Below are positions 14,394 through 63,584 of a DNA stretch of 64,000 nucleotides, in pieces. The notes under the pieces are model-generated. The model had not been told where the DNA came from. It saw only the letters and a program-made list of their open reading frames with translations, and did no database searches. Positions within the stretch are counted from its first letter, which is position 1, and every line of letters starts with the position of its first letter. The stretch is from IMG/VR virus record IMGVR_UViG_3300042359_000853, positions 62,001 to 126,000 of that record; one strand, 5' to 3'. The position numbers and the translations under genes were made by a program.

Positions 14394-14488
14394 CGGAAAA
14401 AAGTTCGTTTCCAGCGCGTCGGGTGCAACATAATGATATATACAACTTACATACTTTTTTTAATATATACTAAAAATACTTAAAGATT

Positions 14489-14875
14489 ATGAATATAAAA
14501 GCAGATTATACACTACCAGTTACCTTAACAGACGAAAGTTTTGATAGTTTTATTGAAACGGGTGTTCGTGTGGTTTATGTAAAAGCTTCTTGGTGTGGTC
14601 CTTGTCGTATGATGGCTCCTGTCATCGATGATCTAGCCAGAGAGTTTGGTGGAGAGGATAAAGTTATATTTGGTAAAGTTGATGCCGATGATTGTGTGGA
14701 GACTTGCCTGAGTTTGAAGGTTAGGAGTGTTCCTACTATTGTTATCTATAAAGATGGAGAATTGAAAGATAAGAAGACAGGAGTGGTTGCAAAACCTGTT
14801 CTGATTGAAATGTTTAAGAGTTTGATGAATGATAACTCTACGGGTGATATTGATACCGGTTCTGAAGATTTTTAA
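14489..14875 (+). CDS. trxA: thioredoxin
   Basis: WCGPC active site, VRSVPT cis-Pro loop. Confidence 0.92.
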   Translation: MNIKADYTLPVTLTDESFDSFIETGVRVVYVKASWCGPCRMMAPVIDDLAREFGGEDKVIFGKVDADDCVETCLSLKVRSVPTIVIYKDGELKDKKTGVVAKPVLIEMFKSLMNDNSTGDIDTGSEDF

Positions 14876-14893
14876 ATCATTTACCCAAAAAAA

Positions 14894-15343
14894 ATGAAAA
14901 AGTTAGAGGGTGGATTGATAATTAAAAATAAGAAGGCTTATTTTGATTATCATATAGAAGAAGAATATACAGCAGGGATACAACTCTTTGGGTCAGAAGT
15001 TAAATCTATTCGTAATTCGGATATACAAATTCGTGATTCTTTTATAGAGGTAAGAAATGGTGAGTGTTTTCTTGTAAACACTCATATTAAATCTTCTTGT
15101 TCTGGAGGATTTTTTTCACATGAAGTTTCTAGAGTAAGAAAGTTATTGTTGAAAAAAAGGGAGATCATCAAAATTCATAAGTTGACAAGTCTAAAGGGTC
15201 TGACCTGTGTGTTACTTGAGTTGTATTGGCATAATCACATAATTAAGTGTAGAATCGGAGTAGCAAAGGGTAAAAAGAATTATGACAAGAGACAATCTGA
15301 GAAAGATATGGAAATAGATCGATATATGAAATCGTTTCTGTAA
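14894..15343 (+). CDS. smpB: SsrA-binding protein SmpB
   Basis: NKKAYFDY.IEE.Y.AGI.L.GSEVKSIR, RKLLL.KREI, AKGKK.YDKR. Confidence 0.93.
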   Translation: MKKLEGGLIIKNKKAYFDYHIEEEYTAGIQLFGSEVKSIRNSDIQIRDSFIEVRNGECFLVNTHIKSSCSGGFFSHEVSRVRKLLLKKREIIKIHKLTSLKGLTCVLLELYWHNHIIKCRIGVAKGKKNYDKRQSEKDMEIDRYMKSFL

Positions 15344-15371
15344 ACTCGATAAACCCGATAGATTTTTAAAA

Positions 15372-15551
15372 TTAATTGTTGTCTGGTTCCAGGTCATACT
15401 CCGGTTTTTCTATGAATACCCCGTATTCAATGATGTTGATTCTGTAGTATATAACGTCATTTTTGAGAGATATTTCTTCTACTACTCCTCTCAGTGGGTC
15501 AGGACTAAGGGTTTTAACTTTATCACCCAGATTGAATTTTGGCGTATTCAT
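15372..15551 (-). CDS. 59-aa small protein, possibly SH3/KOW-like; absent from the ORF track
   Basis: Own translation MNTPKFNLGDKVKTLSPDPLRGVVEEISLKNDVIYYRINIIEYGVFIEKPEYDLEPDNN; fills the gap between smpB and the LamG ORF. Confidence 0.7.
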   Translation of the reverse strand: MNTPKFNLGDKVKTLSPDPLRGVVEEISLKNDVIYYRINIIEYGVFIEKPEYDLEPDNN

Positions 15552-15556
15552 TTTTT

Positions 15557-16345: not shown

Positions 16346-17610
16346 CGTAGGAGTTTCGGTTGGTGTTTCGGTATTGGTTGGTGTTTAAGTTGGGGTTTCG
16401 GTAGGAGTATCAGTGTTTGTTGGTGTAGGTGTTTCAGTTGGAGTTTCGGTTGGAGTCCTCGTAGGAGTTTCGGTTGGTGTTTCGGTATTGGTTGGTGTTT
16501 GAGTTGGTGTTTCGGTAGGAGTATCAGTATTTGTTGGTGTAGATGTTTCAGTAGGTGTCTGTGTTGGTGTTTGAGTTGGTGTTTCGGTAGGAGTATCAGT
16601 ATTTGTTGGTGTAGATGTTTCGGTAGGTGTTTCGGTAGGGGTTTCGGTAGGGGTTTCGGTATTGGTTGGTGTTTCGATAGGAGTATCAGTATTTGTTGGT
16701 GTAGGTGTTTCAGTAGGAGTTTCGGTAGGTGTTTCGGTAGGGGTTTCGGTAGGGGTTTCGGTATTGGTTGGTGTTTCGATAGGAGTATCAGTATTTGTTG
16801 GTGTAGGTGTTTCAGTAGGAGTTTCGGTTGGTGTTTCGGTATTGGTTGGTGTTTGAGTTGGTGTTTCTGTAGGAGTATCAGTATTTGTTGGTGTAGGTGT
16901 TTCAGTTGGGGTTTTGGTAGGTGTCTCCGTAGGAGTTTCGGTTGGTGTTTCGGTATTGGTTGGTGTTTGAGTTGGTGTTTCGGTAGGAGTATCGGTATTT
17001 GTTGGTGTAGATGTTTCAGTAGGTGTCTGTGTTGGTGTTTCAGTTGGTGTTTCTGTAGGAGTATCGGTATTTGTCGGTGTAGGTGTTTCGGTAGGTGTTT
17101 CGGTAGGGGTTTCGGTAGGTGTTTCGGTATTGGTTGGTGTTTGAGTTGGTGTTTCGATAGGAGTATCGGTATTTGTCGGTGTAGATGTTTCAGTAGGAGT
17201 TTCGGTTGGTGTTTCGGTATTGGTTGGTGTTTGAGTTGGTGTTTCGGTAGGAGTATCAGTATTTGTTGGTGTAGGTGTTTCAGTTGGGGTTTTGGTTGGT
17301 GTCTCCGTAGTAGTTTCGGTTGGGGTCTGAGTATTCGTTGGTGTGTTAGATGGTGTTTGTGTATTTGTAGGAGTATTTGTAGGTGTTTCAGTTGGAGTCT
17401 GAGTATTTGTAGGAGTATTTGTAGGTGTTTCAGTTGGAGTCTGAGTATTTGTTGGTGTAGGTGTTTCAGTTGGGGTTTCAGGTGGTGACGCACCCGGTGT
17501 TTCGGTATTTGTTGGTGTAGGTGTTTCAGTAGGTGTCTGTGTTGGTGTTTGAGTTGGTGTTTCGGTAGGAGTGTCAGTAATTGTTGGTGTAGGTGTTGAT
17601 GGAATCGTTG
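16320..17610 (-). repeat. coding tandem repeat, 12-nt units ([16 protein letters not shown]) with higher-order units; mucin-like tract of about 400 aa
   Basis: Plus strand shows repeated GTTGGTGTTTCG/GTAGGTGTTTCA-type units. Confidence 0.95.
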
Positions 17611-20359
17611 TGGTCGAAGTAGTAGTAGTAGATAGAGTGAATGGTGTGTATCCGAACACGTTCATGGATGGATAAGTTGTTGTAGTTGTTGTTGTTTGAT
17701 ATTGTCCTATATTATTATCCTGACAGAATTGACAGAAATTCGATGCCAGACTATATGTTTCTCCTATAGTAGTCACACCCAAACAATCAAGTTCTGGTAT
17801 AGTTGGGTTACTATATTGCCAGCAGAAACCACCTTGTGTGAAACCCCATCCAGAGGCACTTATATACCCAGGTATCAGTATACTATAAGTGTTAGTCGAT
17901 GTATTCCCACATATTTCTGCTGTATACCTGTAAGGATATGTGTAATTACAAATATTTGGTATAAGTTCTCCCGAGTATGTGAAATTCTCGGATTTAATCT
18001 CTGATTCTTTTATTATTTTCCAATAGTCAAAATGTCCTTTTATGAAACCATAAGTAGCACTCAGAATATCGGCAGGAACAATATAAGATGGGATCTTAAT
18101 TACTTTTCTAGACTGTTGTGCGAAACAAGGCAAGAGACATTGTTCTACTGTAAAAAATCTGAATTCGGAGCTATCTAGTAATATTGAAAATTTCCAATCA
18201 TCAAAATAATTATCATTTAACAGATTCAAGGTTTGTATTGATTGACCACTCACATCTATTGAATCAACTTTAGAAAGAGCGAATTTGATTCCTTGAAAGA
18301 GGGTAAGATTTGGAATATCACTCCTACCTGTGTTGAATTTAGACCATTTCCTCGATCCCTGAACATTTATTAGATTGAAACTGAACGTTTTTCCGAAAAA
18401 ATCTACAAAATAGTCCGAAGATGAAGAAAAATAGCTTCCAATATCAAAATAAAAATTCCTATCTGAATCCGAGACATGCAAACTATGAAAAGAATATGAA
18501 TGTCCGTCGGCATTTATGGTATAGAAATAATCTAAGTTTCGGTCACTTCTCGTTACGATTGAGTTAAAACTATTAGGACTCCTATTAAACTCATCAGATA
18601 ACAAGGAATTGTTTAGAAGATATGGATAATCGTTTGTGTTTTGAGAGTTCTTCCATCCCCACTTCAAGAAGATTGGATTCTTTCTCCAAATATCGGTGAG
18701 ATCTGCCCCGTCGATCTTAAATGTCTCCAAATTAGATGTGTATTCAGAAGAAGAGGGTAGATAGGTAATTTCGTTTGATAGATTGAACCTCTCAAAATCT
18801 TTCGGGTTCGACTTGTCTTTAAAATCCCTAAGATAGAATTTGGGCTCATCAGTTTTAATATTGAGGGAACTTTCAAATTCGTATTGGTATCTAGAATAGA
18901 CAGTATCTATAACATCGATATCGAAATCCTTTATATCGAGAAATTTGAACTTGTATATTTTGAATATTTTTGGTTTTCCATTTTCATCTAAAAGATCGAT
19001 CTTGGTTATGCCTGACTCTTCTGGAAAATTTATATAATACTCCATTATATCATTTGTGAATCTAAATCCACCATCAGATATAATATAATAGGAACCGCTA
19101 GAATTTTTATGGATTCTATAGAAAGAATCGTCAATACTGATACCCCATATATCGACTGATGAGAAATTATCAATATTAATGTTTTGTTCTGGTAATTGTG
19201 GGTCACATGGATACTCGGTATTTCGTAGTTTCAATTCATTATTTGTGTTAACAGTCCAGATATTCGTATTTAAACTACTTGATGTTAAACCTGAAAAGGA
19301 AGTCGCCGCAATAATTTTCCAGTTCTGAATTTCATTTGAAATAACTCTTTCCACTTTATAAAAATCACCTCGTATTTGAATCCATGTGTAATCTCTTATC
19401 CGCCACTCCTCAAGAAATGGAGATGATGAACTAGTTGAGGTAAGAAAATTATTTTCATCAATTAATATGTTTGGTGACAAATTTTGCGGTTGGTAAAAAC
19501 TTATCCCTTTCACTTCTTCGATGTCTTCAAAATAAAAACCATAATACCGGTTGAGAGTCCATCTACGAAGTGTATTCTTTGTAGCTGGCTCATCATCAAA
19601 CAGAAAACTCAAATTTAGAATGTTAGGATGGATAATTCCTGAGTTGGCCCACCCTTCAAAAACCATTTTCTGAAAATCGAAATATGTTTGCTCATTAGAA
19701 AGAAAACTATTGAGTATAGAAGACTTTGTGGTAAATAAACCAGTTGAAAGATCTATACCAGTCCAATAAGAAAATTCAGAATCTCTGAAATCTATCCAAA
19801 GACTCGACGTTGGAAACTGGTCATTATCTTCATAATTCTTCTTTAACCATTCTGATATAGAATTGTTACCTTTTAGATCAAAACACTTTACAAACTTCAA
19901 TTTATCTAAAATCTGTTCTCGAAAATTATTTCTTGTTATTTCAACTAAACCTGGATCATCGACTCTAAATATAACAAAACACTTTGGGATACCGTTTCTT
20001 TCAATCCATAACGGAGAAAAGAACTCGAATTCTTCTAAGTAATCTTTATTATTACCTATATTTGATGAACCACTAAAATACAAAGAGTCAATTTGATTTT
20101 CAAAGTTTTGAAACATCAAACTTTTATCACCATCAAATTTGATCTTGAAAATTAATTCTTTTGGGAAACTCCTGAAATAAGTTGCGTAAATTTCACCTAT
20201 ATAATCTGATGGTGAAACGGGCCTCTTCTTGAAGCTAGAACTGGAAAGTATCGGATCCGAATCTATCGAATCTAAAGATATCTTTGATTCAGAATCTACG
20301 ACGATTTTAACATTAGCACTAAGACCAACATTTGTTCTTAAAAGGGAGAAACTTTTCAT
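16385..20359 (-). CDS. large predicted virion protein: globular N-terminal region, Cys-containing segment and Thr/Pro mucin-like tract
   Basis: 1324-aa ORF, no signal peptide, ATATATA motif upstream, lies among structural-type genes. Confidence 0.7.
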
Positions 20360-20414
20360 TTTTACCTTCGTTTATATATAAATAGTGAAGGTTGTCATCT
20401 AGGAACGATATCAA

Positions 20415-23603: not shown

Positions 23604-23695
23604 TAAGGAGACTTTTTTTTGTATATATATTTTATAGTGTTGTCTGGGAATTCTCTATAATTTTGCTAGATTACTCAAAAAAAAATATTAAATAA

Positions 23696-23727
23696 TTTGT
23701 CGATCAAAGAAAAAATCCTTACATTTG
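23696..23727 (+). promoter_or_regulatory. Bacteroidota sigma-A promoter (-33 TTTG / -7 TAnnTTTG)
   Basis: TTTG (23696-23699), 20-nt spacer, TACATTTG (23720-23727): full consensus. Confidence 0.8.
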
Positions 23728-23741
23728 TAAAAAATATCAAG

Positions 23742-23984
23742 ATGACCTTATCAAGAATAGTTATACCTAAAATGTCACTCACCCGGGAACAAAAAGACAA
23801 GTATTTTGTTGGTAGTGGATATGAAGATGAAGAACTCAACTTCATCGATGACAAACCCTGGATTCTTTACCTCGATGACAACGAGACGAGATTATTTTTT
23901 GAGCACGGTGCTACAAAAGAAATGAGACTATCACTTAAAAAACAAATACTACAAAAATTAAACAAAATAAAATGGAACTATTAG
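23742..23984 (+). CDS. hypothetical protein; start reassigned to ATG 23742
   Basis: The ORF-track TTG start lies inside the promoter; ATG 23742 follows an A-rich leader. Confidence 0.6.
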   Translation: MTLSRIVIPKMSLTREQKDKYFVGSGYEDEELNFIDDKPWILYLDDNETRLFFEHGATKEMRLSLKKQILQKLNKIKWNY

Positions 23985-24592
23985 AAGAAATCACAAGCTT
24001 TAACGAACACGAAGAACTATTCAAGGAAAGAACCGGCAATAATTTTTCTTTTTACTACAAAAAGTATTACCCAAAATTGATCTACTACGCTAATAAGATG
24101 TGTAAAGATCAACAAAAAGCAGAAGACATCACTTTCGAGTCTTTTATGACTGCTTTTAAAAAGATTGATAAGTATGAAAGAGAGAAATCACAATTCTCCA
24201 CCTGGCTTTTTACTATTGCTAGAAATATCATACTACAAGATATGAAAAATATCAAAAAAGAAATTTCCATCGACACACAAATCGATGAAGAAGGAACTAC
24301 ACTTAAAGATTTTATCCAATATGAGCACGAAGATCCGATGCTACAAGAAATTCATCAGATGAAAGCTAAGATTATGGTTCAAAAAATTAACTCACTCAAA
24401 GAACCTTACAAAACTGTTATTGAAATGCGTGAAATAAAAAGAATGGCTTACAAAGATATTGCCGACCTTCTTGGCAAAAACCTTAGCACTATTAAATCTC
24501 AGATTAGGAATGGCCGAGCAATACTTATGAAAGAAACAAAGTTTGAATTTGCTAAACTCGAACAAGAAGTAGATACCAAATCGTATTTCTAA
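23972..24592 (+). CDS. sigma-70-family (ECF-like) RNA polymerase sigma factor
   Basis: Region 2 AEDI..ESF..AF..I..Y....SQFSTWLFTIARN; region 4 HTH YKDIADLLGKNLSTIKSQI.NGR. Confidence 0.9.
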   Translation: MELLEEITSFNEHEELFKERTGNNFSFYYKKYYPKLIYYANKMCKDQQKAEDITFESFMTAFKKIDKYEREKSQFSTWLFTIARNIILQDMKNIKKEISIDTQIDEEGTTLKDFIQYEHEDPMLQEIHQMKAKIMVQKINSLKEPYKTVIEMREIKRMAYKDIADLLGKNLSTIKSQIRNGRAILMKETKFEFAKLEQEVDTKSYF

Positions 24593-25146: not shown

Positions 25147-25147
25147 A

Positions 25148-25453
25148 TTAAAATAAGTATTTTCTACCGTCTTCGATATAGTTGTTTAAGTATTCTGTTA
25201 CTGAAGTTAGACTAGATTCAACCTCTTCGAGTTTTTTATCAGTAGCATTAAGTTCTATGCTTGATTCGTCTATTTGATCGTTGGATTCTTCAGAATCTGA
25301 GGTAAATTTATCAAGTAAACTATAAAGGTTTTGTATAGTATCTCTCATACCTCCTGTTTTTTCAATGATATCATTAATTTGTGATAGTATATCACGAATC
25401 GTGTCATTATTTATTTCTTCTCTAGTTTCGTAGAACTTTTTTATCCTGGTCAT
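25148..25453 (-). CDS. acidic coiled-coil protein, candidate internal head protein
   Basis: N-terminus MTRIKKFYE; ATATATA motif 7 nt upstream. Confidence 0.55.
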   Translation of the reverse strand: MTRIKKFYETREEINNDTIRDILSQINDIIEKTGGMRDTIQNLYSLLDKFTSDSEESNDQIDESSIELNATDKKLEEVESSLTSVTEYLNNYIEDGRKYLF

Positions 25454-25494
25454 ACGAAAGTATATATAAAAAAAAACTTTTTGTGTTTCTACTC

Positions 25495-26310: not shown

Positions 26311-26355
26311 ATTTTTTTTATATATACATAAAACAAATAAGTTCTACAACTTAAG

Positions 26356-27603: not shown

Positions 27604-27620
27604 AACTTATATATTGTTTT

Positions 27621-32360: not shown

Positions 32361-32362
32361 TT

Positions 32363-32578: not shown

Positions 32579-32624
32579 GTTAGGTTTTTTTTGTAACTAT
32601 ATATTATTTAAGGTATGTTTGAAC

Positions 32625-33344: not shown

Positions 33345-33430
33345 AATTAGGGTTATTTTTTAGATATATATGGATATTAAATCTTTCTAATGTGTAAAAC
33401 AAACGGGAAAAAGAAAATAAAATCAAGATT

Positions 33431-33829: not shown

Positions 33830-33841
33830 ATGAAAGTTACG

Positions 33842-33849: not shown

Positions 33850-33861
33850 TAAAAAAAACTT

Positions 33862-35278: not shown

Positions 35279-35315
35279 TTTAGTTATATATTATTTTTAA
35301 AATATAGTTTATCAA

Positions 35316-36026: not shown

Positions 36027-36048
36027 CTAATTTATATATCTAGAAAGG

Positions 36049-38446: not shown

Positions 38447-38516
38447 AAACTTGATTTTTATTTTAATCTATATATATTTTTACTAAATCTTTTTTTGAAA
38501 AAATGATAAAACTTGA

Positions 38517-40223: not shown

Positions 40224-40230
40224 ATATATA
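40224..40230 (+). promoter_or_regulatory. ATATATA putative phage late promoter (example upstream of bS21; about 20 copies in the window)
   Basis: Recurs before starts at 14489, 20359, 23603, 25453, 26310, 27603, 32578, 33344, 35278, 36026, 38446, 40235, 45658, 48478, 49450, 50643, 54421, 57787, 60659 and 63585. Confidence 0.75.
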
Positions 40231-40234: not shown

Positions 40235-40426
40235 ATGATTAAAGTAGAACTAGGTAAAGACCCAATAGATAAAGCTCTGAAAATATTCAAGAGAAAATTT
40301 GATAGAGTGGGAGTTATTAAAGAACTCAGAAATAGAAAAGAGTTCAAGAAAAAATCAGTTGTTCGTAGAGAAGAGATCAGAAAAGCTATCTATGTTGAGA
40401 AAAACTTCTTATCACCAAAAGATTAA
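40235..40426 (+). CDS. rpsU: ribosomal protein bS21 (phage-encoded)
   Basis: IDKALK.FKRK....GVIKELR.R.EF.K.SV.RR.E..KAIY. Confidence 0.92.
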   Translation: MIKVELGKDPIDKALKIFKRKFDRVGVIKELRNRKEFKKKSVVRREEIRKAIYVEKNFLSPKD

Positions 40427-40442: not shown

Positions 40443-41168
40443 ATGGATTTAGAAAAAAACTATTACCAGATACTTGGTGTGGATAAAGATGCTACGTCTG
40501 ACGAAATTAAAAAAAAATATTATAAACTATCTAAAAAACTACACCCAGATGTTGGTGGAGATAGTAATCTATTCTCACAGATAAACGAAGCCTACGAAAT
40601 TTTCAGTAACGAAAAGCTAAGAAAAGATTGGGATAAAAGAAGTCGTTTTGGTAAAAACTATAAACTTGTAAATGAGTTTAAAAACTATGAACAAACTATA
40701 TTATCAAAAACTTGGGAGAAGGGTAAGTTCGATAAGATCAAATCTGAAACAGATCTACATATACATCTAGAAGTTGAAAAAAATTTTGGAGGTGTTGTAG
40801 AATATCAAAGATGGGTTACTTGTAAATCTTGTAAAGGAACCGGTCTAGATCTCAGAGGAAAAATAGTTATCAAGGATGAAAATGGTAATATACTAAGACA
40901 ATTTGAAAACGAAGATGGTTGTGATTTCTGTGAAGGAACTGGTAAGGATTGGAGAGATGAGGTATGTAGTTTTTGTGAAGGCAAAGGAAAAACTGGATCA
41001 ATCATTTGTGGTGACTGTCAAGGTAAAAGAAGAATCCTAGGTAATCAAAAGTTAGAAAAAATAAAGTTCCCAAAAGGTGAAAAGTTTCTAAAAATTGAAT
41101 CGATGGGTAATATATCTGTTACTTCTCAAGGTAAATCAGGACATCTTTTTCTAATAAAGAAAAGTTAA
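40443..41168 (+). CDS. dnaJ: truncated DnaJ-like co-chaperone (J domain and zinc finger)
   Basis: YYQILGV, HPD motif, four CxxCxGxG-type repeats; no G/F region or full C-terminal domain. Confidence 0.85.
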   Translation: MDLEKNYYQILGVDKDATSDEIKKKYYKLSKKLHPDVGGDSNLFSQINEAYEIFSNEKLRKDWDKRSRFGKNYKLVNEFKNYEQTILSKTWEKGKFDKIKSETDLHIHLEVEKNFGGVVEYQRWVTCKSCKGTGLDLRGKIVIKDENGNILRQFENEDGCDFCEGTGKDWRDEVCSFCEGKGKTGSIICGDCQGKRRILGNQKLEKIKFPKGEKFLKIESMGNISVTSQGKSGHLFLIKKS

Positions 41169-45658: not shown

Positions 45659-45696
45659 TTAATCTATATATTAGAATTTTTAGATCTTTAAGAAAT

Positions 45697-46383: not shown

Positions 46384-46399
46384 CGGGAATTAAGATTTT

Positions 46400-48478
46400 C
46401 TATAGACTACCTCCTCCACCACCGCCAGATAGAGTAGTAGTAGAAGTAGTAGTCGGCCAAAGACATTGAGTTCCGCTTATTTCAACAAAACTTCTTGTAT
46501 AAGTCCCACAAGTATAAGAAAGTGCAGGAGAACATGCAGGAAAGTAAATACTTCCCGGTGTTGAACACACCGAATAGGTATAAGAACCCGAAATTCTTTG
46601 GATAGGTGGTTGGTTCTGAAGTGGTGTTCTAGCACAAAAATCATACCCCCAAGCTGTTGATTGGCTACTGAAAGTTGGACTCAAGAGAACTTCAAAATAG
46701 GTAAGATTTCTTACCTCAGATGCCCATCTTGGTGTGCTACTTATACTAAATACCGATCCATTATCTATTGTTAGATTTAAGTTTAAAGTTGCATTCGGTA
46801 AACTTGTTGCTTGAAGTCGAACAACCATAAGTAAGTCGCCAACCTCACCTTGATTCAAAGTTTGACTATAGTTCGATTCTGTAAAATTGAAAGACTGGTT
46901 AGAAACATTTGTGTCAAAAGTTTTTTCTTGGTATCCATAGAAGAAGTTTCTGTTTGAAAGTGGAATTACTTGTATAGTGAATTGATCGACCCCACTACTT
47001 GAGGTTATACTGAAGGAACCAGAAATATTCCAACTAAACGTATAACCACCCGAAGATGGAAATGAGTAGGTAGATCCAGACCAATTAGTCTGTGCTGGTG
47101 GATGGCCAAATTTGAGTCTATATCTCTGTGAATAAATTTCTGTGATTGGATCTCCAATATTATAACTTATATCGAAAGAGGTATTATTTTCCGGAGATCC
47201 ACCACTACTAGTTGCATATACTGTTAAAACCTGACCTGATTGACATACCGATGATGAATAGGTGGCTGCTATTAGATTGCTGTTTTTGGATATCTCAACA
47301 TAAACCTTATCGCCTTGGAGAAGTGAATAGGTCGAAAACCCAAGTTGAATACTCATAGTTCCTGTGTAATTTTGAGCATCATTATAATACAAAGTCCAAG
47401 ATGATGAATCAAGTAAAGAAACAACACCTCCACTATTTTTTTGGAGTTTAGCAATCAAAGAATTTGTAGCATTTCCAGCAGCTATATAGGAACTTTCGAT
47501 TTCACTCTGAATATAGTAAACGCCTGCAGTTCCGGCTGTATAGATAGAATTAGTTGAAGACATGAAATTACCAAATGGTCCGGTGTAAAGAATAGATGAA
47601 GCTGAACCACCAACAAAATTATTGACTAATGTTCCTTGAGAAATGTTAAAATTTACTGTTGCCGTGGCAGTAGTAATACCAACTGAACATGTACTTGGCA
47701 TTGCGATAAGTGTTGCTTGTTCATTTACCAAAAAGTTTGTTGGAACAAGCATTTGATCTATTAGAAAACCACTACTACATTCAAGATATCTAAATACATT
47801 TTGTTCGGTGGAAGTTACTCTAATTCGAGTACAACCGATCGATTGAGTAGCGCAGTCACAACTACAACTAGGTCCAGGATTTGTTACGGTCTCACTAAGA
47901 AAGTAATTTGACCATGAACCAGAATTAATCAACTGGGAACCAGTTCCAGAAATTAAATATACATTTTGTATTGGATCTTTCAAGCAAATAACTTTTTGAT
48001 TTCCCCAATATTGAGTTAGTAGTGAAGAAAAGGTAGCAGAATTATCACAACATGAGTTGAATATAACGTTTATTGGATTTTTAGTTGTAGTGGGAGTTCC
48101 AGTAGTAGTTGAGGTTGTTGTAGTAGAACACGATGGGAAAGCTTGCGATCCTTTTGTAACCGTTAGCCATCCGTCATCACCAGGTGTGTAATCGAGCACT
48201 ATAAAAATTTGTCCATCTGAAATTCTTTGAACATAAACAACAGGTTCAAAACCATAAGAAGGTAAGTTTGAAAATGTATAGATAGGATCCGTTCCTGGAT
48301 CCCATCCTGGTGCCCCATCTAATCTTATTGTGGTATTACTCCCACCACAACAGTTAGTATATTGAAGATAGTATTTATAGGTTGACGTAGGATATGTTGT
48401 TAGAATACTTGTTGAAGTATCGATACTATCCCTATATAGTGTTACGTTATAATTATCACACTGAAGAACTAAAGCCAT
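46400..48478 (-). CDS. Cys/Thr-rich predicted virion protein with two C1q-like domains
   Basis: Cys modules; poly-Thr runs; YTAGTAGVYYI...LQGDKVYVE and YSFPSSGGYTF...LNQGE. Confidence 0.6.
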   Translation of the reverse strand: MALVLQCDNYNVTLYRDSIDTSTSILTTYPTSTYKYYLQYTNCCGGSNTTIRLDGAPGWDPGTDPIYTFSNLPSYGFEPVVYVQRISDGQIFIVLDYTPGDDGWLTVTKGSQAFPSCSTTTTSTTTGTPTTTKNPINVIFNSCCDNSATFSSLLTQYWGNQKVICLKDPIQNVYLISGTGSQLINSGSWSNYFLSETVTNPGPSCSCDCATQSIGCTRIRVTSTEQNVFRYLECSSGFLIDQMLVPTNFLVNEQATLIAMPSTCSVGITTATATVNFNISQGTLVNNFVGGSASSILYTGPFGNFMSSTNSIYTAGTAGVYYIQSEIESSYIAAGNATNSLIAKLQKNSGGVVSLLDSSSWTLYYNDAQNYTGTMSIQLGFSTYSLLQGDKVYVEISKNSNLIAATYSSSVCQSGQVLTVYATSSGGSPENNTSFDISYNIGDPITEIYSQRYRLKFGHPPAQTNWSGSTYSFPSSGGYTFSWNISGSFSITSSSGVDQFTIQVIPLSNRNFFYGYQEKTFDTNVSNQSFNFTESNYSQTLNQGEVGDLLMVVRLQATSLPNATLNLNLTIDNGSVFSISSTPRWASEVRNLTYFEVLLSPTFSSQSTAWGYDFCARTPLQNQPPIQRISGSYTYSVCSTPGSIYFPACSPALSYTCGTYTRSFVEISGTQCLWPTTTSTTTLSGGGGGGSL

Positions 48479-48526
48479 TTAATTTTTTTTTTTTCTTTAT
48501 ATATATTTTTTCTTGATTACCAGAAA

Positions 48527-49456
48527 CTAAGAAATAATATAAGTGAAACAATCAAAAGGACAATCTTCGGGTCTAACCGGTGGTTGAGTTGTAGTTCTTA
48601 CTACTGGACTAGGTGCTACCACCGGAACCTGTGATCCTATCACGGTATCCTGGTTAGGATAAGTTTCAACCCAAAACTTTTTATCCCAGGTTGATTTGAA
48701 AATATTAAAATCCCATGTAGTATAACCAAACTCATCAAGTGATGGATATATTGAACGATAACTCGGATTATTTCTAAGTTTTAATAGGTTCGATCTTCGG
48801 TTTACTTTTGATATTATAGTTTGTCTTGTTTTGCCGAAATTAGTAAGTTCTGGTAGAAATCTGTAGTTTTTATTGTCAAAAAGTTCAATCGTATGAAATA
48901 TAGGACTATACTCACCCGAGTGCCTATAAATAGTGTTTGATGTGATATTTTTAACACCAAAATAAGAATCGATTCTGAGTGGTTCATTTCTATTTTGCTT
49001 TATAGTAGTAAAAGTAGGAGTAGATAAGGAGGACCAATTGAGTTGTTTTATACCATCAATCCTATTTGAATTCAATTTTTTTGTTGGAGTGAGAATATTG
49101 GGTGGTAGAAAATTAGCTTCACGTATTAGAGAATTCGATTTCATTTTTAGTTCGTCCGGAAATCCCGCTCTCAAAATATAGGGTAGATTGACTAAATCTT
49201 GACCTGAAAACCTTTGTATAGAACCATCTTCTTCAATAATAACATATTCCAAAGGCTCGGAGAATCCCCAATCTCCTAGTGGATTGTTTATTGCGTTGAT
49301 AAAATTTAGAGCTGTGACATCAGAAAACGAACGATTATACATATCGTCTCGATTGATGTTTTTAACCTCTAAACTCGTATCACTAACTTCAATACGAACT
49401 AAAACATTCTTAAACTTTTTATTGATATAAATCTTTATACCACCTTCCATAGCCAT
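48527..49456 (-). CDS. predicted structural protein, possibly the detached C-terminal part of 16385-20359; start may be ATG 49450
   Basis: 309-aa ORF; the ATATATA motif overlaps the first ATG. Confidence 0.55.
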   Translation of the reverse strand: MAMEGGIKIYINKKFKNVLVRIEVSDTSLEVKNINRDDMYNRSFSDVTALNFINAINNPLGDWGFSEPLEYVIIEEDGSIQRFSGQDLVNLPYILRAGFPDELKMKSNSLIREANFLPPNILTPTKKLNSNRIDGIKQLNWSSLSTPTFTTIKQNRNEPLRIDSYFGVKNITSNTIYRHSGEYSPIFHTIELFDNKNYRFLPELTNFGKTRQTIISKVNRRSNLLKLRNNPSYRSIYPSLDEFGYTTWDFNIFKSTWDKKFWVETYPNQDTVIGSQVPVVAPSPVVRTTTQPPVRPEDCPFDCFTYIIS

Positions 49457-49488
49457 ATATATAAATTATGGCTACAACCAGTTACAAT

Positions 49489-50583
49489 TTAGTTTAAGTA
49501 AAAATTTAGATCGGGTATGAACTCAGAAAGTTCAGTTCTATCAATCTGTTGAGAGATTTCATCGTAAGATTTGAGAACTAAGTTCAATCCATCCCATTTC
49601 ATTTCTGTATATTCAACTTCTATATCACCCAAAAATTTTTTGATAAGTTCCTTCTCTAATGACAATCTTTCTCGGCAAAGTTTTATCGATTGTATTTTTC
49701 CTGAGCTCAAATATTTATCGACTCGAATATCACGACGAAACTTCTTATCCCAAAAATATTTACTTTCTACCAGTTCTTTTTTTGGTGGTAGAAGAGGTGG
49801 TGAATATGAATAGTTGTTGTACCCTGTGTAGGTGTAGGGAAGATAATCATATTTTTTCGGATCTCTATCTACTGGTAGTAGATTAAAGTCAATACGTGAC
49901 AAAGCGTATGCTAGATTTTCTAAGTGAGCTAAATCTTGATATTCAGAAGTAGTGTGTTCGTTTTGATAACCAACTGAAAGGTTTGTACACTCTGGATAGA
50001 TTGATGCAAATTGTAGTGAATCAGTAGAAAATCCGTTCGTATCAATTCTATAATTTAGACCATTTTTATTGAGTTCATCACATAGTGTTTGAGAAAAAAT
50101 ATCACTTGCTGTTCTTTGTCTTGTTTGGTGAGTAATAACAGAGGATGTTCCTCGTCTATCGAGAGAAATTATTTTAGAAAGATTTTCATTTGGTGAATGG
50201 ATATGTTTTTGGGAAAAATATCGTGAACCTTTACATCCAACCTCTTCTCCAACAAAGAAATAGTAATTACCCGGAAAACCTCTATCTATTAACCAGAGCA
50301 TTAGAGACATACCGGCTTTATCGTCTGCTCCGAGTATTGATTTACCGGATGTTTTAACGAGATTTCCTTCAAATACGTGTTCAACATAAACTTTATCACG
50401 GCCGGCAGTGTCTAGGTGTGAAGTGAATGCATAGGTGTTTCTCTCACCTATTTCAAGGGAGTAGTTTCCCATCTCGTCTCTTACGGCTGATTTTGGTAGG
50501 AATTTGATAAGTTCTGACTCGTATCCGTGTGGGTAAGTTTCTCTGGTAAGTTCTATAAAAATGTCTCGTATATTCATAATCAC
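49489..50583 (-). CDS. M20/M28-family zinc peptidase; start probably ATG 50577
   Basis: SHLDT, LGADDKAG, GEEVG, SLDRRG, TDS, NLSVGYQNEH. Confidence 0.85.
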   Translation of the reverse strand: MIMNIRDIFIELTRETYPHGYESELIKFLPKSAVRDEMGNYSLEIGERNTYAFTSHLDTAGRDKVYVEHVFEGNLVKTSGKSILGADDKAGMSLMLWLIDRGFPGNYYFFVGEEVGCKGSRYFSQKHIHSPNENLSKIISLDRRGTSSVITHQTRQRTASDIFSQTLCDELNKNGLNYRIDTNGFSTDSLQFASIYPECTNLSVGYQNEHTTSEYQDLAHLENLAYALSRIDFNLLPVDRDPKKYDYLPYTYTGYNNYSYSPPLLPPKKELVESKYFWDKKFRRDIRVDKYLSSGKIQSIKLCRERLSLEKELIKKFLGDIEVEYTEMKWDGLNLVLKSYDEISQQIDRTELSEFIPDLNFYLN

Positions 50584-50584
50584 A

Positions 50585-50618
50585 CAAAGATAATAAAAAA
50601 AAATGAAATCGGTTCAAA
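50585..50618 (-). promoter_or_regulatory. Bacteroidota sigma-A promoter
   Basis: Minus strand TTTG, 22-nt spacer, TATCTTTG, just before the peptidase start. Confidence 0.65.
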
Positions 50619-50642
50619 CTTTTAAGATTTAATATATAAATC

Positions 50643-52805: not shown

Positions 52806-53031
52806 GATTATCAATAAGTGAAGTGAGATTATAATCTTTATCTGAAATAGTGTTACCCTCGTCATGTGTAGTAGTTCTCACAATAACTCGGTTGTATTTC
52901 AAGATTATATCGGGGTGATGATTAACTTCGTTTGCTATTTTAGCTACCTTGTTTACAAATTTCAAACCTTCTTCATAAGAAGAAAACTCAAATTTTCTGA
53001 TAAGATATCCATTTTTTTTAGTCCAACTCAT
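52777..53031 (-). CDS. phhB: pterin-4-alpha-carbinolamine dehydratase
   Basis: F.F.SY...L.FVN.VA..A...NHHPDI...Y..V....TTHD.G...S.KD..L...ID. Confidence 0.9.
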   Translation of the reverse strand: MSWTKKNGYLIRKFEFSSYEEGLKFVNKVAKIANEVNHHPDIILKYNRVIVRTTTHDEGNTISDKDYNLTSLIDNLIEKVGKEA

Positions 53032-54421: not shown

Positions 54422-54454
54422 ATGTACTATATATAATTATTTTTTTTTAGATAT

Positions 54455-57787: not shown

Positions 57788-57830
57788 ATGAAATATATAT
57801 TCAATATTTCATTCTATCCAAACTATTCTA

Positions 57831-60659: not shown

Positions 60660-60717
60660 AAGTCTGAATCTACTTTTTATATATAGAGAAAATCTAGCCC
60701 ATCGATAAAAAAAAACA

Positions 60718-61818
60718 ATGATAATAAATTTACGGTCGAACTCGGATCTTTCTGGTTTTTATATAGTTTTTAGAGGTTCTACTAATCTCGAAACAAGTGG
60801 TAATTTTGGAATTTCACATCTTCTAGAACATCTTATATGTAGAAACTTAAAAAAAATACAGGATCAATTTTTCAGAGAAGGTATTACATGGAATGCTTAC
60901 ACATCACTCAATGAAGTAGTATTTTATTTCAGAGGATTAGAGAAAAACTTGTCTAAATTTAGAGAAAAAATTATTGACATAATACTTGACTTGAATATTG
61001 AGAGGGATTCATTCAAAAGAGAAAAAGATATTATTTTAGAAGAGTATTCACAATATTTTTCTAGACCTTCAAGTAATCACTTTTATAATTTTTCTACTAA
61101 ATATTTGAATTCGTATGGGCCGATGGGCCTCAAAGAAGATATTGAGAACATCTCCCAGATAGAAGTTCTGAAATTTTATGAAAAATACTTTCTTGAACCA
61201 TCGTTGGTGATCAACGTATCTAGAAATCTTTTCTTTAATTCAGATATTAAATTTTCCAGTAATGATATTTCAAAAAAATGGATATTAAAAGAAAATAAAA
61301 ATGCTAGTTCTCTACCATCTTCAGTTCCTAAAGACCAAGAGTCTGTAATATTTTATTCTAAACTTTTTGATGAAGACTTTGCTTGGATTAATTTCATCAA
61401 TCTTTTACTTTCAGCTGATCACGGTTCTATTCTACTTGATAGATTGAGATTTTCAAGTGGCCTAGTTTATGATATTGAAGCTAATCAAACACTTTTCGGA
61501 AATCAATCTCTTGTTACAATTTCTACAAGTGTCTCGCAAAAAAACTCAAAAATAGCAATCGATTTGGTTTGGGAATGTCTTGAAGATTTTAACAAAAAAT
61601 TAGATATAGATTCTGTTGAAGACCTTAAAAAGCATTTAATTCAGATATCAAAAATGAAAAAAATAGACCGATATAAAAACATCAATCGGTGGATATTCCC
61701 CAAAAACTGGGATGTTGAATCCATACTAAAAGATATTGATATATCGGTCTTAGAAGAAAAGATAAAGAAGTATTACAACCCAAAGAACTTTGAGGTTTCA
61801 ATACAATCATCCAAATAA
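60718..61818 (+). CDS. M16 (insulinase-like) zinc peptidase
   Basis: GISHLLEH inverted zinc motif, NAYTS, EKDIILEE, LR...GLVYDI. Confidence 0.88.
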   Translation: MIINLRSNSDLSGFYIVFRGSTNLETSGNFGISHLLEHLICRNLKKIQDQFFREGITWNAYTSLNEVVFYFRGLEKNLSKFREKIIDIILDLNIERDSFKREKDIILEEYSQYFSRPSSNHFYNFSTKYLNSYGPMGLKEDIENISQIEVLKFYEKYFLEPSLVINVSRNLFFNSDIKFSSNDISKKWILKENKNASSLPSSVPKDQESVIFYSKLFDEDFAWINFINLLLSADHGSILLDRLRFSSGLVYDIEANQTLFGNQSLVTISTSVSQKNSKIAIDLVWECLEDFNKKLDIDSVEDLKKHLIQISKMKKIDRYKNINRWIFPKNWDVESILKDIDISVLEEKIKKYYNPKNFEVSIQSSK

Positions 61819-63030
61819 CTCATCAGCGTCTGAGATATCACGAAACTCATCCATAGATTCTTCAAGCTGTGCAAACTGCTCTTCAAACTCCTGCATTTCA
61901 TCAAATGACTTATATTTGAAGTATCCATTGACTATCGGTGCCATTCTTTGTAGAACTTCATCAGTGAAAACATTGGGTGAAAAAAGCTGCTTGGTAGTAA
62001 CTGATTTATCTAAGTGACGAACAAACCATCGGTGACCACCAGGTTTAAAAGTGATCTCACCAGTCGATTTATCTACTTCTTCTTTTCCTTGCGCAATACC
62101 AATCTCTTGATAAAACTCTGGTCTACAGAAGGCATCTAGTCCTGTATAGGGATTCATACCGTGAATAAATGAGATCTCAAACTTGATTTTCTTAGGTTTA
62201 GCTAGTCTGTTTTTAGCAGTTTTGAATGTTACAACTATACCAGATGCACCTAGGTCCATCTCGTCTTCTTCTTGAGTTTTCAGCTTTGCTTTACTCATCA
62301 TGCCGATAACAGAACTTGAATAAACGAGTGCCTTTCCACCTTTCAAGATTTCTTGTGGATACATAGAACCCTGCTCTAAATAGACGTGATTGCACACAAC
62401 CATCGGGATACCCAAGTATCCTAGATCAATATTGATGGATCTGAACATTGCAGCAAGTGCTTTAGCCCTGGTCATATCAACTTTGATGTTTCCAGAAATA
62501 AGGTCTTCTTTTTCTTTGTTTGAGCTCATTTGCCCAACTGAATCGAGAACTATTAAGAAAGGCTCGATTTCACCACGCTTCATCTTTTCTTCTTTAAGAG
62601 AATCAAGTAGCTGTGTGAGTAAGATGTTAATCTCTTCAACTTTATTACCGTTGATAAGTTTGAACTTCTCTGGTGAGTTATCGACACCATATTTTGGTAG
62701 ATCGGCAAGTTCAATAGAATATTCAGTATCGATGTAGATAACACCCATACCTGATTTTTGTGCGTGACGAGCAATCGACAGTGCGATAAAAGATTTGCCG
62801 GTTCCAGAATCACCAGCTACGGTGAAAATCTTTCCGTGCTGAATACCACCACCAAGCATATCTGCTGATAGAGCGGCGTTTAGTAAATAGACACCGGTTG
62901 AGATAAACTTTTTTTCACGAATTTCACTCTGAATAATAACAGGAACGCTTTTTGTAATGTTTGATAAAATATCACCGATCTTGGTGAATGAAAATGAATT
63001 TTTTTCTTCTTTTTTTGTAGTTTTAGCCAT
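61807..63030 (-). CDS. uvsX: UvsX/RecA-like recombinase
   Basis: ISTG..LLN.ALS, GDSGTGKS, YIDTE, VLDSVG, DMTRAK, NHVY, GGK...YSSS, KNRL. Confidence 0.9.
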   Translation of the reverse strand: MAKTTKKEEKNSFSFTKIGDILSNITKSVPVIIQSEIREKKFISTGVYLLNAALSADMLGGGIQHGKIFTVAGDSGTGKSFIALSIARHAQKSGMGVIYIDTEYSIELADLPKYGVDNSPEKFKLINGNKVEEINILLTQLLDSLKEEKMKRGEIEPFLIVLDSVGQMSSNKEKEDLISGNIKVDMTRAKALAAMFRSINIDLGYLGIPMVVCNHVYLEQGSMYPQEILKGGKALVYSSSVIGMMSKAKLKTQEEDEMDLGASGIVVTFKTAKNRLAKPKKIKFEISFIHGMNPYTGLDAFCRPEFYQEIGIAQGKEEVDKSTGEITFKPGGHRWFVRHLDKSVTTKQLFSPNVFTDEVLQRMAPIVNGYFKYKSFDEMQEFEEQFAQLEESMDEFRDISDADELFG

Positions 63031-63034
63031 GAAA

Positions 63035-63063
63035 CTTTTTTTTGATATTATATCAAAAAAAAG
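63035..63063. promoter_or_regulatory. perfect 14-bp inverted repeat immediately upstream of uvsX
   Basis: CTTTTTTTTGATAT-T-ATATCAAAAAAAAG. Confidence 0.6.
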
Positions 63064-63072
63064 GCTAAAAGA

Positions 63073-63486
63073 TTAAAATGTAAAGTGCCAATGAAAGTGA
63101 TTCATTACAATCAAAAACTGAGTAGTTGTAACAAATCCAGATCTTAGAAGATCAACAATAAGATTGTAAATACCACCTCTTTTAGTAGATCTCTCTAAGA
63201 AGGTTAGTAGTGCTAGACCAACTAAAGTTGATAAAAAGAACACCCATTGACTAGAGAGAAGACCAACGGTCAAGAAAATAAAATTAAGTGTATTTATTAG
63301 AGTCCAAAAACCAAGTAGATAAAAATCTTGAGGCTCTCTAAAACTTGAAATCTCTGGAAGTTTTTTAGTGACCGTAAAAAATCCTCTGAACCAATCTTTT
63401 ATTTTATAAATTTTTACAAAATGAAAGAGCAGAAAAAAATTAGCCTGTGATAAGAAAAATAGGATAAGATAGAATATACTGGTCAT
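63073..63486 (-). CDS. membrane protein with about four hydrophobic segments
   Basis: Hydrophobic stretches throughout the 137 aa. Confidence 0.65.
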   Translation of the reverse strand: MTSIFYLILFFLSQANFFLLFHFVKIYKIKDWFRGFFTVTKKLPEISSFREPQDFYLLGFWTLINTLNFIFLTVGLLSSQWVFFLSTLVGLALLTFLERSTKRGGIYNLIVDLLRSGFVTTTQFLIVMNHFHWHFTF

Positions 63487-63584
63487 AAAATTTTTAGATT
63501 ATATCTAAAAGTGTTTTTTTGTTCTAAAAATCTATATCTGCCGAGGAGAATAATTTTAATATATAACCTTGATTTTCTAAAAAT

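What the first reader, a model, noticed from the sequence alone, without database searches (positions are those of the whole stretch)
14462..63565. ATATATA late-promoter-like motif with bimodal spacing to the start codon, suggesting leaderless and short-leader mRNA classes
Seen: the motif-to-start gap is 4-8 nt for starts at 25453, 26310, 27603, 35278, 36026, 40235, 45658, 49450, 50643, 54421 and 57787. It is 18-22 nt for 14489, 23603, 32578, 33344, 38446, 48478, 60659 and 63585. Only 20359 (13 nt) lies between. No Shine-Dalgarno sites are evident. Known: T4 late promoters are a lone TATAAATA with transcription starting a few nt downstream. Inference: the short class is essentially leaderless and the long class has an A-rich leader of about 13-16 nt, giving two translation-initiation modes that the phage bS21 might tune.
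Basis: partly seen in the sequence, partly recalled or inferred. Interest (0 to 1): 0.7.

Follow-up and report, generated by a model that had tools for sequence, protein, structure and literature searches.

The report
Megaphage late promoter, two leader classes
A short ATATATA box sits in front of about a third of the genes of this huge lake phage of Bacteroidota; it looks like a T4-style late promoter placed either right against the start codon (so the mRNA would have no leader) or about 19 bases away (a short A-rich leader), but no transcript start has been mapped.

Summary
All 20 listed starts carry the motif at the stated distances. Alternating-AT runs of 7+ nt occur 28 times in 2.4 kb of intergenic DNA against 2.0±1.4 in shuffles, and 9 times in 91 kb of coding DNA.

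The window is part of an uncultured lake megaphage (Mahaphage clade, Bacteroidota host). In its 227-kb record the motif-to-start gaps are 34 at 4-8 nt, 9 at 9-15 nt and 31 at 16-22 nt. A 385-kb relative gives 71, 14 and 45.

- **Nature of the motif:** it has no -35 partner and precedes portal, capsid, sheath, terminase, endolysin and bS21 genes.
- **Candidate factors:** the phage encodes a gp55-like late sigma (outside the window) and an ECF sigma (inside it). No phage RNA polymerase was found.
- **Leaderless inference:** host-type TAnnTTTG promoters in these phages show the same two spacings. Their start site is known to lie 4-5 nt downstream, so the short class most likely gives leaderless mRNAs.

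No transcript 5' ends could be mapped, and the proposed bS21 link is untested. I rate it a new variant of a known kind and moderately interesting.

The parts
14464..14469 (+). TATATA box, long class: 19 nt to ATG 14489 (thioredoxin-domain protein)
20373..20378 (-). TATATA box, intermediate: 13 nt to ATG 20359 (1324-aa probable virion protein)
23622..23627 (-). TATATA box, long class: 18 nt to ATG 23603 (1062 aa); the ortholog in G002 is also long class (21 nt)
25461..25466 (-). TATATA box, short class: 7 nt to ATG 25453 (101 aa)
26319..26324 (-). TATATA box, short class: 8 nt to ATG 26310 (271 aa). It lies in a divergent spacer, 29 nt from ATG 26356 on the + strand
27608..27613 (-). TATATA box, short class: 4 nt to ATG 27603 (127 aa); the G002 ortholog also has 4 nt
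32598..32603 (-). TATATA box, long class: 19 nt to TTG 32578 (71 aa); the G002 ortholog has 23 nt
33365..33370 (-). TATATA box, long class: 20 nt to TTG 33344 (PhoH-like); the G002 ortholog has 19 nt
35285..35290 (-). TATATA box, short class: 6 nt to ATG 35278 (111 aa)
36033..36038 (-). TATATA box, short class: 6 nt to ATG 36026 (RuvC-like resolvase); the G002 ortholog has 4 nt
38469..38474 (-). TATATA box, long class: 22 nt to ATG 38446 (88 aa). It lies in a divergent spacer, 40 nt from the SbcC-like gene at 38517 (+)
40225..40230 (+). TATATA box, short class: 4 nt to ATG 40235 (phage bS21)
40235..40426 (+). Phage ribosomal protein bS21 (63 aa). Its best solved relative is Flavobacterium johnsoniae bS21, and it keeps Tyr54. 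The next gene, 40443-41168, has no box of its own
45665..45670 (-). TATATA box, short class: 6 nt to ATG 45658 (1495 aa)
48498..48503 (-). TATATA box, long class: 19 nt (A12-rich leader) to ATG 48478 (692 aa). Eight RNA-library runs hold contigs of this gene (two of them flagged probably DNA), but none holds contigs of the 881 nt upstream of the box
49456..49461 (-). TATATA box (last register of a 9-nt AT run), short class: 5 nt to ATG 49450. An earlier in-frame ATG at 49456 overlaps the box
50633..50638 (+). TATATA box, short class: 4 nt to GTG 50643 (720 aa). All 7 orthologs in relatives have TTTAATATATA followed by 4-8 nt and ATG
54428..54433 (-). TATATA box, short class: 6 nt to ATG 54421 (467 aa)
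57794..57799 (-). TATATA box, short class: 6 nt to ATG 57787 (1110 aa)
60678..60683 (-). TATATA box, long class: 18 nt to ATG 60659 (942 aa). It lies in a divergent spacer, 32 nt from ATG 60718 (+)
63560..63565 (+). TATATA box, long class: 19 nt to ATG 63585 (894 aa, runs past the window end); the G002 ortholog has 23 nt
23972..24592 (+). Phage-encoded ECF-type sigma factor (Sigma70_r2 59.9 bits, r4_2 42.9 bits; SigW-like). Alternative candidate reader of the motif
23658..23665 (+). Host-type -7 box TAATTTTG, 31 nt upstream of ORF 23697, which heads the ECF sigma operon
14386..14393 (-). Host-type -7 box TATATTTG, 4 nt from ATG 14381. It heads the leftward run of about 19 window genes that have no ATATATA box
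50585..50592 (-). Host-type -7 box TATCTTTG in front of the protease-like gene. It is 1 nt from GTG 50583 and 7 nt from ATG 50577, which is the more likely start

Best explanation
ATATATA (extended T-rich-WA-TATATA, no -35 partner) is most likely the late promoter of this Bacteroidota megaphage. It would be read by the host RNA polymerase core carrying a phage sigma, most likely the gp55-like sigma2-only protein, in the manner of the T4 TATAAATA late promoter. I infer that transcription starts at an A about 5-7 nt after the box.

The phage places the box at two preferred distances from the start codon.
- **Short class, 4-8 nt:** the A of AUG is itself the first transcribed base, or within 0-3 nt of it, so the mRNA is leaderless.
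- **Long class, 16-25 nt:** this gives an A-rich, SD-free leader of 11-19 nt of the kind Bacteroidota ribosomes use.
- **In-between leaders of 3-9 nt:** these are avoided, presumably because they serve neither initiation route well.

The same two-distance rule holds for the phage's host-type (TAnnTTTG) promoters. It is therefore a property of how these phages build transcription units, not of the late motif alone.

Shown: enrichment, placement, conservation, the gene classes served, and the presence of the sigma genes. Inferred: the start site, leaderless translation, and which sigma reads the box.
For: - **Enrichment and placement:**
- **Replication:** the 227-kb parent record, a 385-kb relative with about 45% protein identity (167 of 456 genes against 20 expected), 100 kb of the published 634-kb genome LR745206, and seven relatives for one ortholog.
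- **No -35 element:** relative entropy is about 0 from -45 to -6 before the box.
- **Late genes served:** portal, major head protein, prohead protease, tail sheath, terminase and endolysin. A virion structural protein and bS21 are also served.
- **Sigma and polymerase genes:** a gp55-like late sigma is conserved in G001-G003, in the published Mahaphage genomes listed and in Lak phages, and it hits cyanophage 'gp55'. No phage RNA polymerase was found.
- **Geometry:** in G001 the short class peaks at a gap of 5, and the long class has A at 81/89/76% of +6/+7/+8. In G002 the short class peaks at a gap of 4, and A jumps to 79% at +5.
- **Host-type boxes:** they are enriched in the sense orientation (39 against 13.5±3.6) and are also bimodal. 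Ten of 39 lie at 4-5 nt (P = 1.4e-6) and 19 at 14-25 nt. In F. johnsoniae the start site lies 4-5 nt after this box (PMC6847099).
- **Start codons and SD:** short-class starts are ATG in 30 of 34 and 71 of 72 genes. There is no SD signal.
- **Class conservation between orthologs:** 23 concordant, 7 discordant, Fisher P = 0.0125.
- **RNA contigs:** they cover the 692-aa gene but not the DNA just upstream of its box.
Against: - No 5' ends were mapped. The RNA evidence is low-depth contigs that break at the A-run.
- The gp55-like gene lies outside the window, and its match is modest (E about 1e-7 over 57 residues). It has no match among solved structures.
- No gp33-like partner was looked for, and no sliding clamp was identified (where the control was also silent).
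- The A-peak of the long class is about as sharp when anchored on the start codon as on the box. It could therefore reflect translation-context selection instead of a start site.
- About 10% of gaps fall in the trough, and 7 of 30 ortholog pairs switch class.
- Four of 34 short-class starts in G001 are GTG or TTG.
- Many spacers lack terminators, so read-through transcripts would also give leadered copies of short-class genes.
Confidence: 0.6

Rival explanations
1. The motif and promoter role are the same, but the reader is the phage ECF-type sigma encoded in the window (23972-24592), not the gp55-like protein.
For: It is a bona fide two-domain sigma. It is conserved across the clade. It is transcribed from a host-type promoter, as expected for a cascade. 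It is the only sigma gene inside the window.
Against: ECF sigmas normally need a -35 element read by domain 4, and no positional information exists upstream of the box. TATATA is unlike usual ECF -10 boxes (own knowledge). Phyletic patterns do not separate the two sigmas.
Confidence: 0.2
2. The box is a promoter, but transcription starts within or upstream of it. Both classes would then be leadered (roughly 10 and 25 nt), and there would be no leaderless mRNAs.
For: No start site is mapped. Some phage polymerases start inside their promoter motif (own knowledge). The A-rich signal can also be read as translation context.
Against: Host-type boxes with a known start geometry show the same 4-5 nt class. 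T at -1 and A at +1 at the ATG of the short class fit start-site preference. No phage RNA polymerase was found.
Confidence: 0.13
3. The motif acts in RNA, as a translation enhancer, a binding site for a phage regulator or a processing site, and not as a promoter.
For: At 4-8 nt it occupies the place where an SD would sit. The hosts lack SD and use A/U-rich leaders (PMC6847099).
Against: The same box with the same upstream flank also sits 16-25 nt away. It heads divergent units where no upstream transcript exists. Genes inside operons have A-rich upstream DNA but no box. A late-sigma homolog is present.
Confidence: 0.05
4. The box is a promoter for a phage-encoded RNA polymerase, like the AT-rich early promoters of AR9 and phiKZ (AAATATATATTAT-N6-G).
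For: The sequence resembles the AR9 early consensus, which has a start 6 nt downstream (PMC5312081).
Against: No Rpb1 domain was found in records that are 95-97% complete. No DFDGD or AxxDGD motif occurs in any predicted protein. The genes served are late structural genes, not early ones.
Confidence: 0.02

Closest known systems
T4-type late promoter (TATAAATA) read by gp55 with gp33 and the gp45 clamp
   Same: A lone 8-9 bp A/T box of -10 type with no -35 element. It sits in front of nearly every late transcription unit. A gp55-family sigma2-only protein is encoded by the phage. T4-like replication and recombination genes (UvsX-like, gp46/SbcC-like) and T4-like portal, capsid and sheath genes are present (PMC2988020).
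   Different: The consensus is ATATATA, not TATAAATA. The host polymerase is from Bacteroidota. gp33 and clamp partners were not identified. About 45% of the boxes abut the start codon, whereas T4 late mRNAs have SD-bearing leaders (own knowledge).
Bacteroidota sigmaA promoter (-33 TTTG / -7 TAnnTTTG)
   Same: It is used by the same phage for other genes. It shares the short distance to the start site and the same two spacing classes (PMC6847099).
   Different: ATATATA does not fit TAHHTTTG. Only 3 of 89 (G001) and 14 of 168 (G002) TATATA genes also have a host-type box.
Leaderless mRNAs (lambda cI from PRM; common in Actinobacteria, Deinococcus and archaea)
   Same: The promoter box is so close to the start codon that the AUG would be the 5' end. 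There is no SD, and the start is almost always AUG.
   Different: Here this is only inferred. In flavobacteria leaderless mRNAs are rare (5.5% of mapped mRNAs in F. psychrophilum, PMC9723704; 87% of leaders exceed 10 nt in F. johnsoniae, PMC6847099). In this phage, short-class genes are about 38-43% of genes with a TATATA within 40 nt upstream (34 of 89 in G001, 71 of 168 in G002).
AR9/phiKZ virion-polymerase early promoters (AAATATATATTAT-N6-G)
   Same: An AT-alternating core, with the start about 6 nt downstream (PMC5312081).
   Different: Those are early promoters read by a phage multisubunit polymerase. No such polymerase was found here, and the genes served are late.
Poxvirus late promoter TAAATG (own knowledge)
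   Same: A late initiator that overlaps the start codon, so the coding region begins essentially at the transcript start.
   Different: It is a eukaryotic virus with its own polymerase and poly(A) heads. It is an analogy only.

Membership tests
T4-type late promoter / gp55 system | A single -10-type A/T box with no -35 element | tested here: met
   Relative entropy is about 0 bits at -45..-6 before the box in 162 (G002) and 81 (G001) sites. The flank is only T-rich plus A at -1.
T4-type late promoter / gp55 system | Consensus TATAAATA | tested here: not met
   The consensus is (T)WA-TATATA. It matches TATAAATA at 6-7 of 8 positions when aligned.
T4-type late promoter / gp55 system | The phage encodes a gp55-family late sigma | tested here: met
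   phrog_234 'late sigma transcription factor' matches with E 1e-7 at G001:220946-221311, which is outside the window. It is conserved in G002 and G003. tblastn hits annotated cyanophage gp55. Its protein-atlas clusters are viral only and carry Sigma70_r2.
T4-type late promoter / gp55 system | gp33 co-activator and gp45 sliding clamp | tested here: inconclusive
   PF02916 found nothing, but it also rang in no control genome. gp33 was not searched.
T4-type late promoter / gp55 system | Serves late (virion, packaging, lysis) genes | tested here: met
   Portal, major head protein, prohead protease, tail sheath, terminase and endolysin each have their own box. Timing itself was not measured.
Leaderless mRNA | The transcript 5' end lies at or within a few nt of the start codon | not testable with these tools
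   Only low-depth RNA contigs were available. The feature is inferred from box-to-ATG distances of 4-8 nt and from host-type boxes at 4-5 nt.
Leaderless mRNA | AUG start and no Shine-Dalgarno site | tested here: met
   ATG in 30 of 34 (G001) and 71 of 72 (G002) short-class genes. SD cores occur in 11 of 244 genes against 14.5 expected at random.
Bacteroidota sigmaA promoter | -7 box TAnnTTTG (TAHHTTTG) | tested here: not met
   ATATATA does not fit this pattern. Host-type boxes occur in front of other genes.
phiKZ/AR9-type promoters | Phage-encoded multisubunit RNA polymerase | tested here: not met
   No PF00623 match in G001-G003, two of which are 95-97% complete. No catalytic DFDGD-type motif in any predicted protein of G001 or G002. 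Very divergent polymerases could escape both tests.
ECF sigma promoters | Conserved -35 (AAC-type) box at a fixed spacer from the -10 box | tested here: not met
   No positional information and no consistently enriched 4-mer at -40..-14 in the two genomes.

The most novel reading that the evidence does not exclude
Megaphages of Bacteroidota run two translation-initiation routes side by side. About 40% of promoter-proximal genes, early and late, would be made as leaderless mRNAs, against about 5% in their hosts. The most abundant virion proteins would use A-rich leaders. Phage-made ribosome parts such as bS21, whose own gene is a leaderless late gene, would shift ribosomes between the two routes late in infection.
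Probability: 0.15. Interest if true: 0.85.

Novelty: new variant of a known kind. Interest (0 to 1): 0.6.

Why it matters
The largest known phages (Mahaphage clade, 0.4-0.7 Mb) are uncultured, and nothing in the papers I could search describes their promoters. A simple, highly predictive late box together with host-type boxes would allow several things.
- Transcription units and temporal classes could be read directly from metagenomic sequence.
- Gene starts could be corrected.
- There would be a concrete, testable model of how these phages express genes in hosts that do not use Shine-Dalgarno pairing.

If the short class is truly leaderless, these phages use leaderless initiation about eight times more often than flavobacteria do. 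That would give the phage-encoded bS21 and other translation genes a specific question to be tested against.

Tried and rejected
- **RNA evidence:** two rounds of RNA-run searches and read laying gave only low-depth assembler contigs that break at the A-run, so there was no start-site resolution.
- **Near-identical phages:** megablast against deposited phages found nothing near-identical.
- **gp55 structure:** a profile of the gp55-like protein found no solved structure.
- **Clamp family PF02916:** silent here and also in the controls, so uninformative.
- **Phage RNA polymerase:** Pfam Rpb1_2 and a catalytic-motif scan were negative, so the AR9/phiKZ-type reading was rejected.
- **Third promoter motif:** among genes lacking both boxes, only A-rich upstream DNA was found.
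- **-35 element:** none found.
- **Cultured relatives for a bench system:** Tenacibaculum PTm1 and pT24 and Chryseobacterium MA9V-1, as well as Lak phages, do not have TATATA as their top upstream motif. The 735-kb LR756501 has it but almost only in the long class.
- **Separating the two sigmas by phyletic pattern:** both co-occur across the clade.
- **Large window proteins:** most have no Pfam or PHROG function.

Full report
**What the window is.** The window is 33% G+C and about 95% coding, with many very large ORFs. It is the reverse strand of positions 8402-72401 of a 95,110-bp IMG/VR virus record. That record is 100% identical to part of a 227,583-bp record, G001. CheckV puts the two at 17% and 39% complete, which implies a genome of roughly 0.55-0.6 Mb. 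DNA runs holding the sequence are lake-water metagenomes. The T4-like major head protein of G001 is 69% identical to that of the 634-kb genome LR745206 and 54% identical to that of the 735-kb LR756501. These belong to the Mahaphage clade, predicted to infect Bacteroidetes (PMC7162821). The host assignment is backed here by many canonical Bacteroidota -7 boxes (TAnnTTTG) in front of genes. It is also backed by a phage bS21 whose best solved relative is the Flavobacterium johnsoniae protein.

**Check of the observation.** Every one of the 20 starts has the motif at the stated distance. Of about 22 ATATATA sites in the window, one lies in coding DNA (4899). Another (14436) lies in the same spacer as the 14489 promoter, 46 nt from that start. 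In the 95-kb record there are 28 alternating-AT runs of at least 7 nt in 2,424 bp of intergenic DNA. Dinucleotide-preserving shuffles give 2.0±1.35 (maximum 7 of 1000), and 90.9 kb of coding DNA holds 9. In an unbiased hexamer screen of the 40 nt upstream of genes, TATATA ranks first, with 31 genes against 2.6 expected. Shine-Dalgarno cores are not enriched: 11 of 244 genes against 14.5 expected at random.

**Bimodality beyond the window.**
- In G001, 89 of 244 genes have TATATA within 40 nt upstream. Gap counts are 34 at 4-8 nt, 9 at 9-15 nt and 31 at 16-22 nt.
- For genes whose upstream neighbour is co-directional, so that attribution is unambiguous, the counts are 20/4/13. Uniform placement of the motif in the spacer would give 6.2/7.7/6.4.
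- G002 is a 385-kb record, 95% complete, with proteins about 45% identical. There TATATA precedes 167 of 456 genes against 20 expected. Its histogram has 39 genes at gap 4, 18 at 5, 5 at 6 and 8 at 7. Only 8 genes fall at 8-13, followed by a broad peak at 19-24.
- The same pattern appears in 100 kb of LR745206, with 10 genes at gap 4, 3 at gap 5, and then 16-28.
- The ortholog of the 720-aa gene at 50643 keeps TTTAATATATA plus 4-8 nt plus ATG in all seven relatives examined, although the spacers are otherwise unalignable.
- Among best-hit pairs between G001 and G002 that both carry the box, 16 are long/long, 7 short/short and 7 discordant (Fisher P = 0.0125).

The classes are therefore real, conserved and partly gene-specific, with a thin continuum between them.

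**What the motif is.** Both classes share the same flank: T-rich from -12 to -2, and A at -1 in 83-100% of sites (83-90% in G002). In G002 the consensus is TAATATATA. From -45 to -6 there is no positional information and no consistently enriched word, so there is no -35 element. The genes served include portal, major head protein, prohead protease, tail sheath, large terminase and endolysin, all in the long class. Short-class genes include a virion structural protein, a RuvC-like resolvase and bS21.

By contrast, a leftward run of about 19 window genes (24 in G001) starting at 14381 has no box. It encodes an ATP-dependent protease and a glycosyltransferase, and it is headed by a host-type box, TATATTTG-CTCT-ATG. 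Genes with neither box show only A-rich upstream DNA, as expected for internal operon genes in an SD-less system.

No phage RNA polymerase was detected. Two phage sigma genes were found.
- An ECF-type sigma lies in the window at 23972-24592. Its operon is headed by a host-type box.
- A 121-aa sigma2-only protein lies outside the window. It matches the PHROG 'late sigma transcription factor' family and annotated cyanophage gp55. It is conserved in G001-G003, in the published Mahaphage genomes listed and in Lak phages.

A lone -10-type box plus a gp55-family protein is the T4 late arrangement (PMC2988020). Their phyletic distributions do not separate them.

**Why the short class is probably leaderless.** This is inference from five lines of evidence.
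- **Known host geometry.** For the host-type box the geometry is known from F. johnsoniae. The box spans -12 to -5 and the start lies 4-5 nt after it (PMC6847099). In these phages host-type boxes are enriched in the sense orientation (19 against 6.6±2.6 in G001; 39 against 13.5±3.6 in G002). They show the same two classes. In G002, 9 lie at exactly 4 nt, 1 at 5 and 1 at 6, then none until 14, and 19 lie at 14-25 nt. The excess at 4-5 nt has P = 1.4e-6. A 4-nt gap puts the A of ATG at +1.
- **Matching shift between genomes.** In the long class of TATATA genes an A is conserved just where the A of ATG sits in the short class. In G001 the short mode is a gap of 5, and A is 81/89/76% at +6/+7/+8. 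In G002 the short mode is a gap of 4, and A jumps from 48% to 79% at +5. The one-base shift between the genomes is seen in both classes.
- **Start-site preference.** In the G002 short class the base before ATG is T in 67% of genes, which gives the pyrimidine(-1)/purine(+1) pair preferred at start sites (the preference itself is own knowledge).
- **Start codons.** Short-class starts are ATG in 30 of 34 and 71 of 72 genes.
- **The trough.** It corresponds to leaders of about 3-9 nt. From general knowledge of leaderless translation, these are too long for 5'-AUG recognition, and they are short for 30S loading on a leader.

The long class would give leaders of about 11-19 nt. These are rich in A, which matches the Kozak-like A preferences of Bacteroidota (PMC6847099).

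**RNA data.** Across eight RNA-library runs (two flagged probably DNA), contigs cover the 692-aa gene (46400-48478). None lies on the 881 nt upstream of its box (48505-49386). This fits a promoter there. The contigs are shallow, break at the A12 run and cannot place a 5' end. The runs of the second search were also chosen with that gene.

**bS21.** The gene at 40235-40426 scores 43.7 bits against PF01165. It has the box 4 nt upstream and is followed by a gene without a box. [quoted passage not shown] The protein keeps the tyrosine aligned with Tyr54 of F. johnsoniae bS21, which stacks on 16S rRNA and helps sequester the anti-SD. That suggests it preserves SD-independent initiation. Nothing here tests whether it favours one mRNA class.

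**Comparison and novelty.**
- The element works like a T4 late promoter, but it fails the exact-consensus test, and its partners gp33 and gp45 were not found.
- It resembles the AR9 early consensus only in sequence.
- Leaderless mRNAs are a known kind, but they are rare in flavobacteria (5.5%, PMC9723704).
- Full-text searches found no description of promoters or leaderless genes in Mahaphage-type or bS21 phages. This does not prove that none exists.
- Other Bacteroidota jumbo phages sampled have other top upstream words, so the ATATATA box and the abundant short class are features of a subclade.

**Caveats.**
- Genes were called with a simple longest-ORF rule. Some starts are wrong; for example, the protease-like gene more likely starts at ATG 50577 than at GTG 50583.
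- TATATA is its own reverse complement, so boxes in divergent spacers cannot be assigned to one gene from sequence alone.
- Timing, start sites, the sigma that reads the box and the mode of translation are all inferred.

Noticed in passing
window 14386-14393 and the leftward genes 14381 to 1: A canonical Bacteroidota -7 box (TATATTTG) lies 4 nt from ATG 14381. It heads a run of about 19 overlapping genes without any ATATATA box, including an ATP-dependent protease (10471-12600) and a glycosyltransferase (6793-7458). This is probably an early or middle operon whose first gene would itself be leaderless.
   Followed up: partly
G002 (L042-L061) and G001 genome-wide: Host-type TAHHTTTG boxes show the same two spacing classes as the late box: 4-6 nt and 14-25 nt, with none at 7-13 nt in G002. 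The leaderless/leadered split is therefore not tied to late genes.
   Followed up: yes
window 50575-50592: The protease-like ORF opens with GTG at 50583, but its third codon, ATG 50577, matches the N-termini of the orthologs. The host-type box TATCTTTG is then 7 nt away. Orthologs in relatives have the box 20-25 nt from the start.
   Followed up: partly
window 23658-24592: A phage ECF-type sigma factor (SigW-like) sits in a two-gene operon behind a host-type box with a 31-nt A-rich leader. No promoter class that could be its own was found.
   Followed up: partly
G001:C1:128292-128313 (window-scale coordinates 66292-66313, just outside the window): One gene carries two tandem boxes, at 19 nt and 5 nt from its ATG, so both preferred positions are occupied at once.
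   Followed up: no
window 16385-20359: There is strong GC skew (+0.26) and long antisense ORFs inside the 1324-aa gene. A domain of unknown function (phrog_15511) recurs in five of the large proteins scanned (1324, 1110, 705, 861 and 1309 aa). These are probably repeat-rich virion proteins.
   Followed up: no
L039:6430-7947 and L039:11980-13686 (G001): Two large genes of homing-endonuclease/HNH type (505 and 568 aa) lie in the head-gene block, the first between the portal and major head protein genes and the second between the prohead protease and tail sheath genes. Each has its own TATATA box.
   Followed up: no
L066, L067, L068, L069, L065/L072: Other Bacteroidota jumbo phages have different top upstream hexamers: Lak ATAAAT/TAAATA, PTm1 TACATA, MA9V-1 ATAACA. 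The 735-kb LR756501 has TATATA almost only at 16-25 nt. The late box and the use of the short class appear to be lineage-specific.
   Followed up: partly
window 46400-48478: This 692-aa gene of unknown function is the part of the region most often recovered in freshwater metatranscriptome contigs (95-99% identity), so it is likely a highly expressed late protein.
   Followed up: partly
G001:C1:220836-220945: A terminator-like hairpin with a TATATA in its loop lies upstream of the gp55-like gene, which has neither a clear late box nor a clear host-type box.
   Followed up: no
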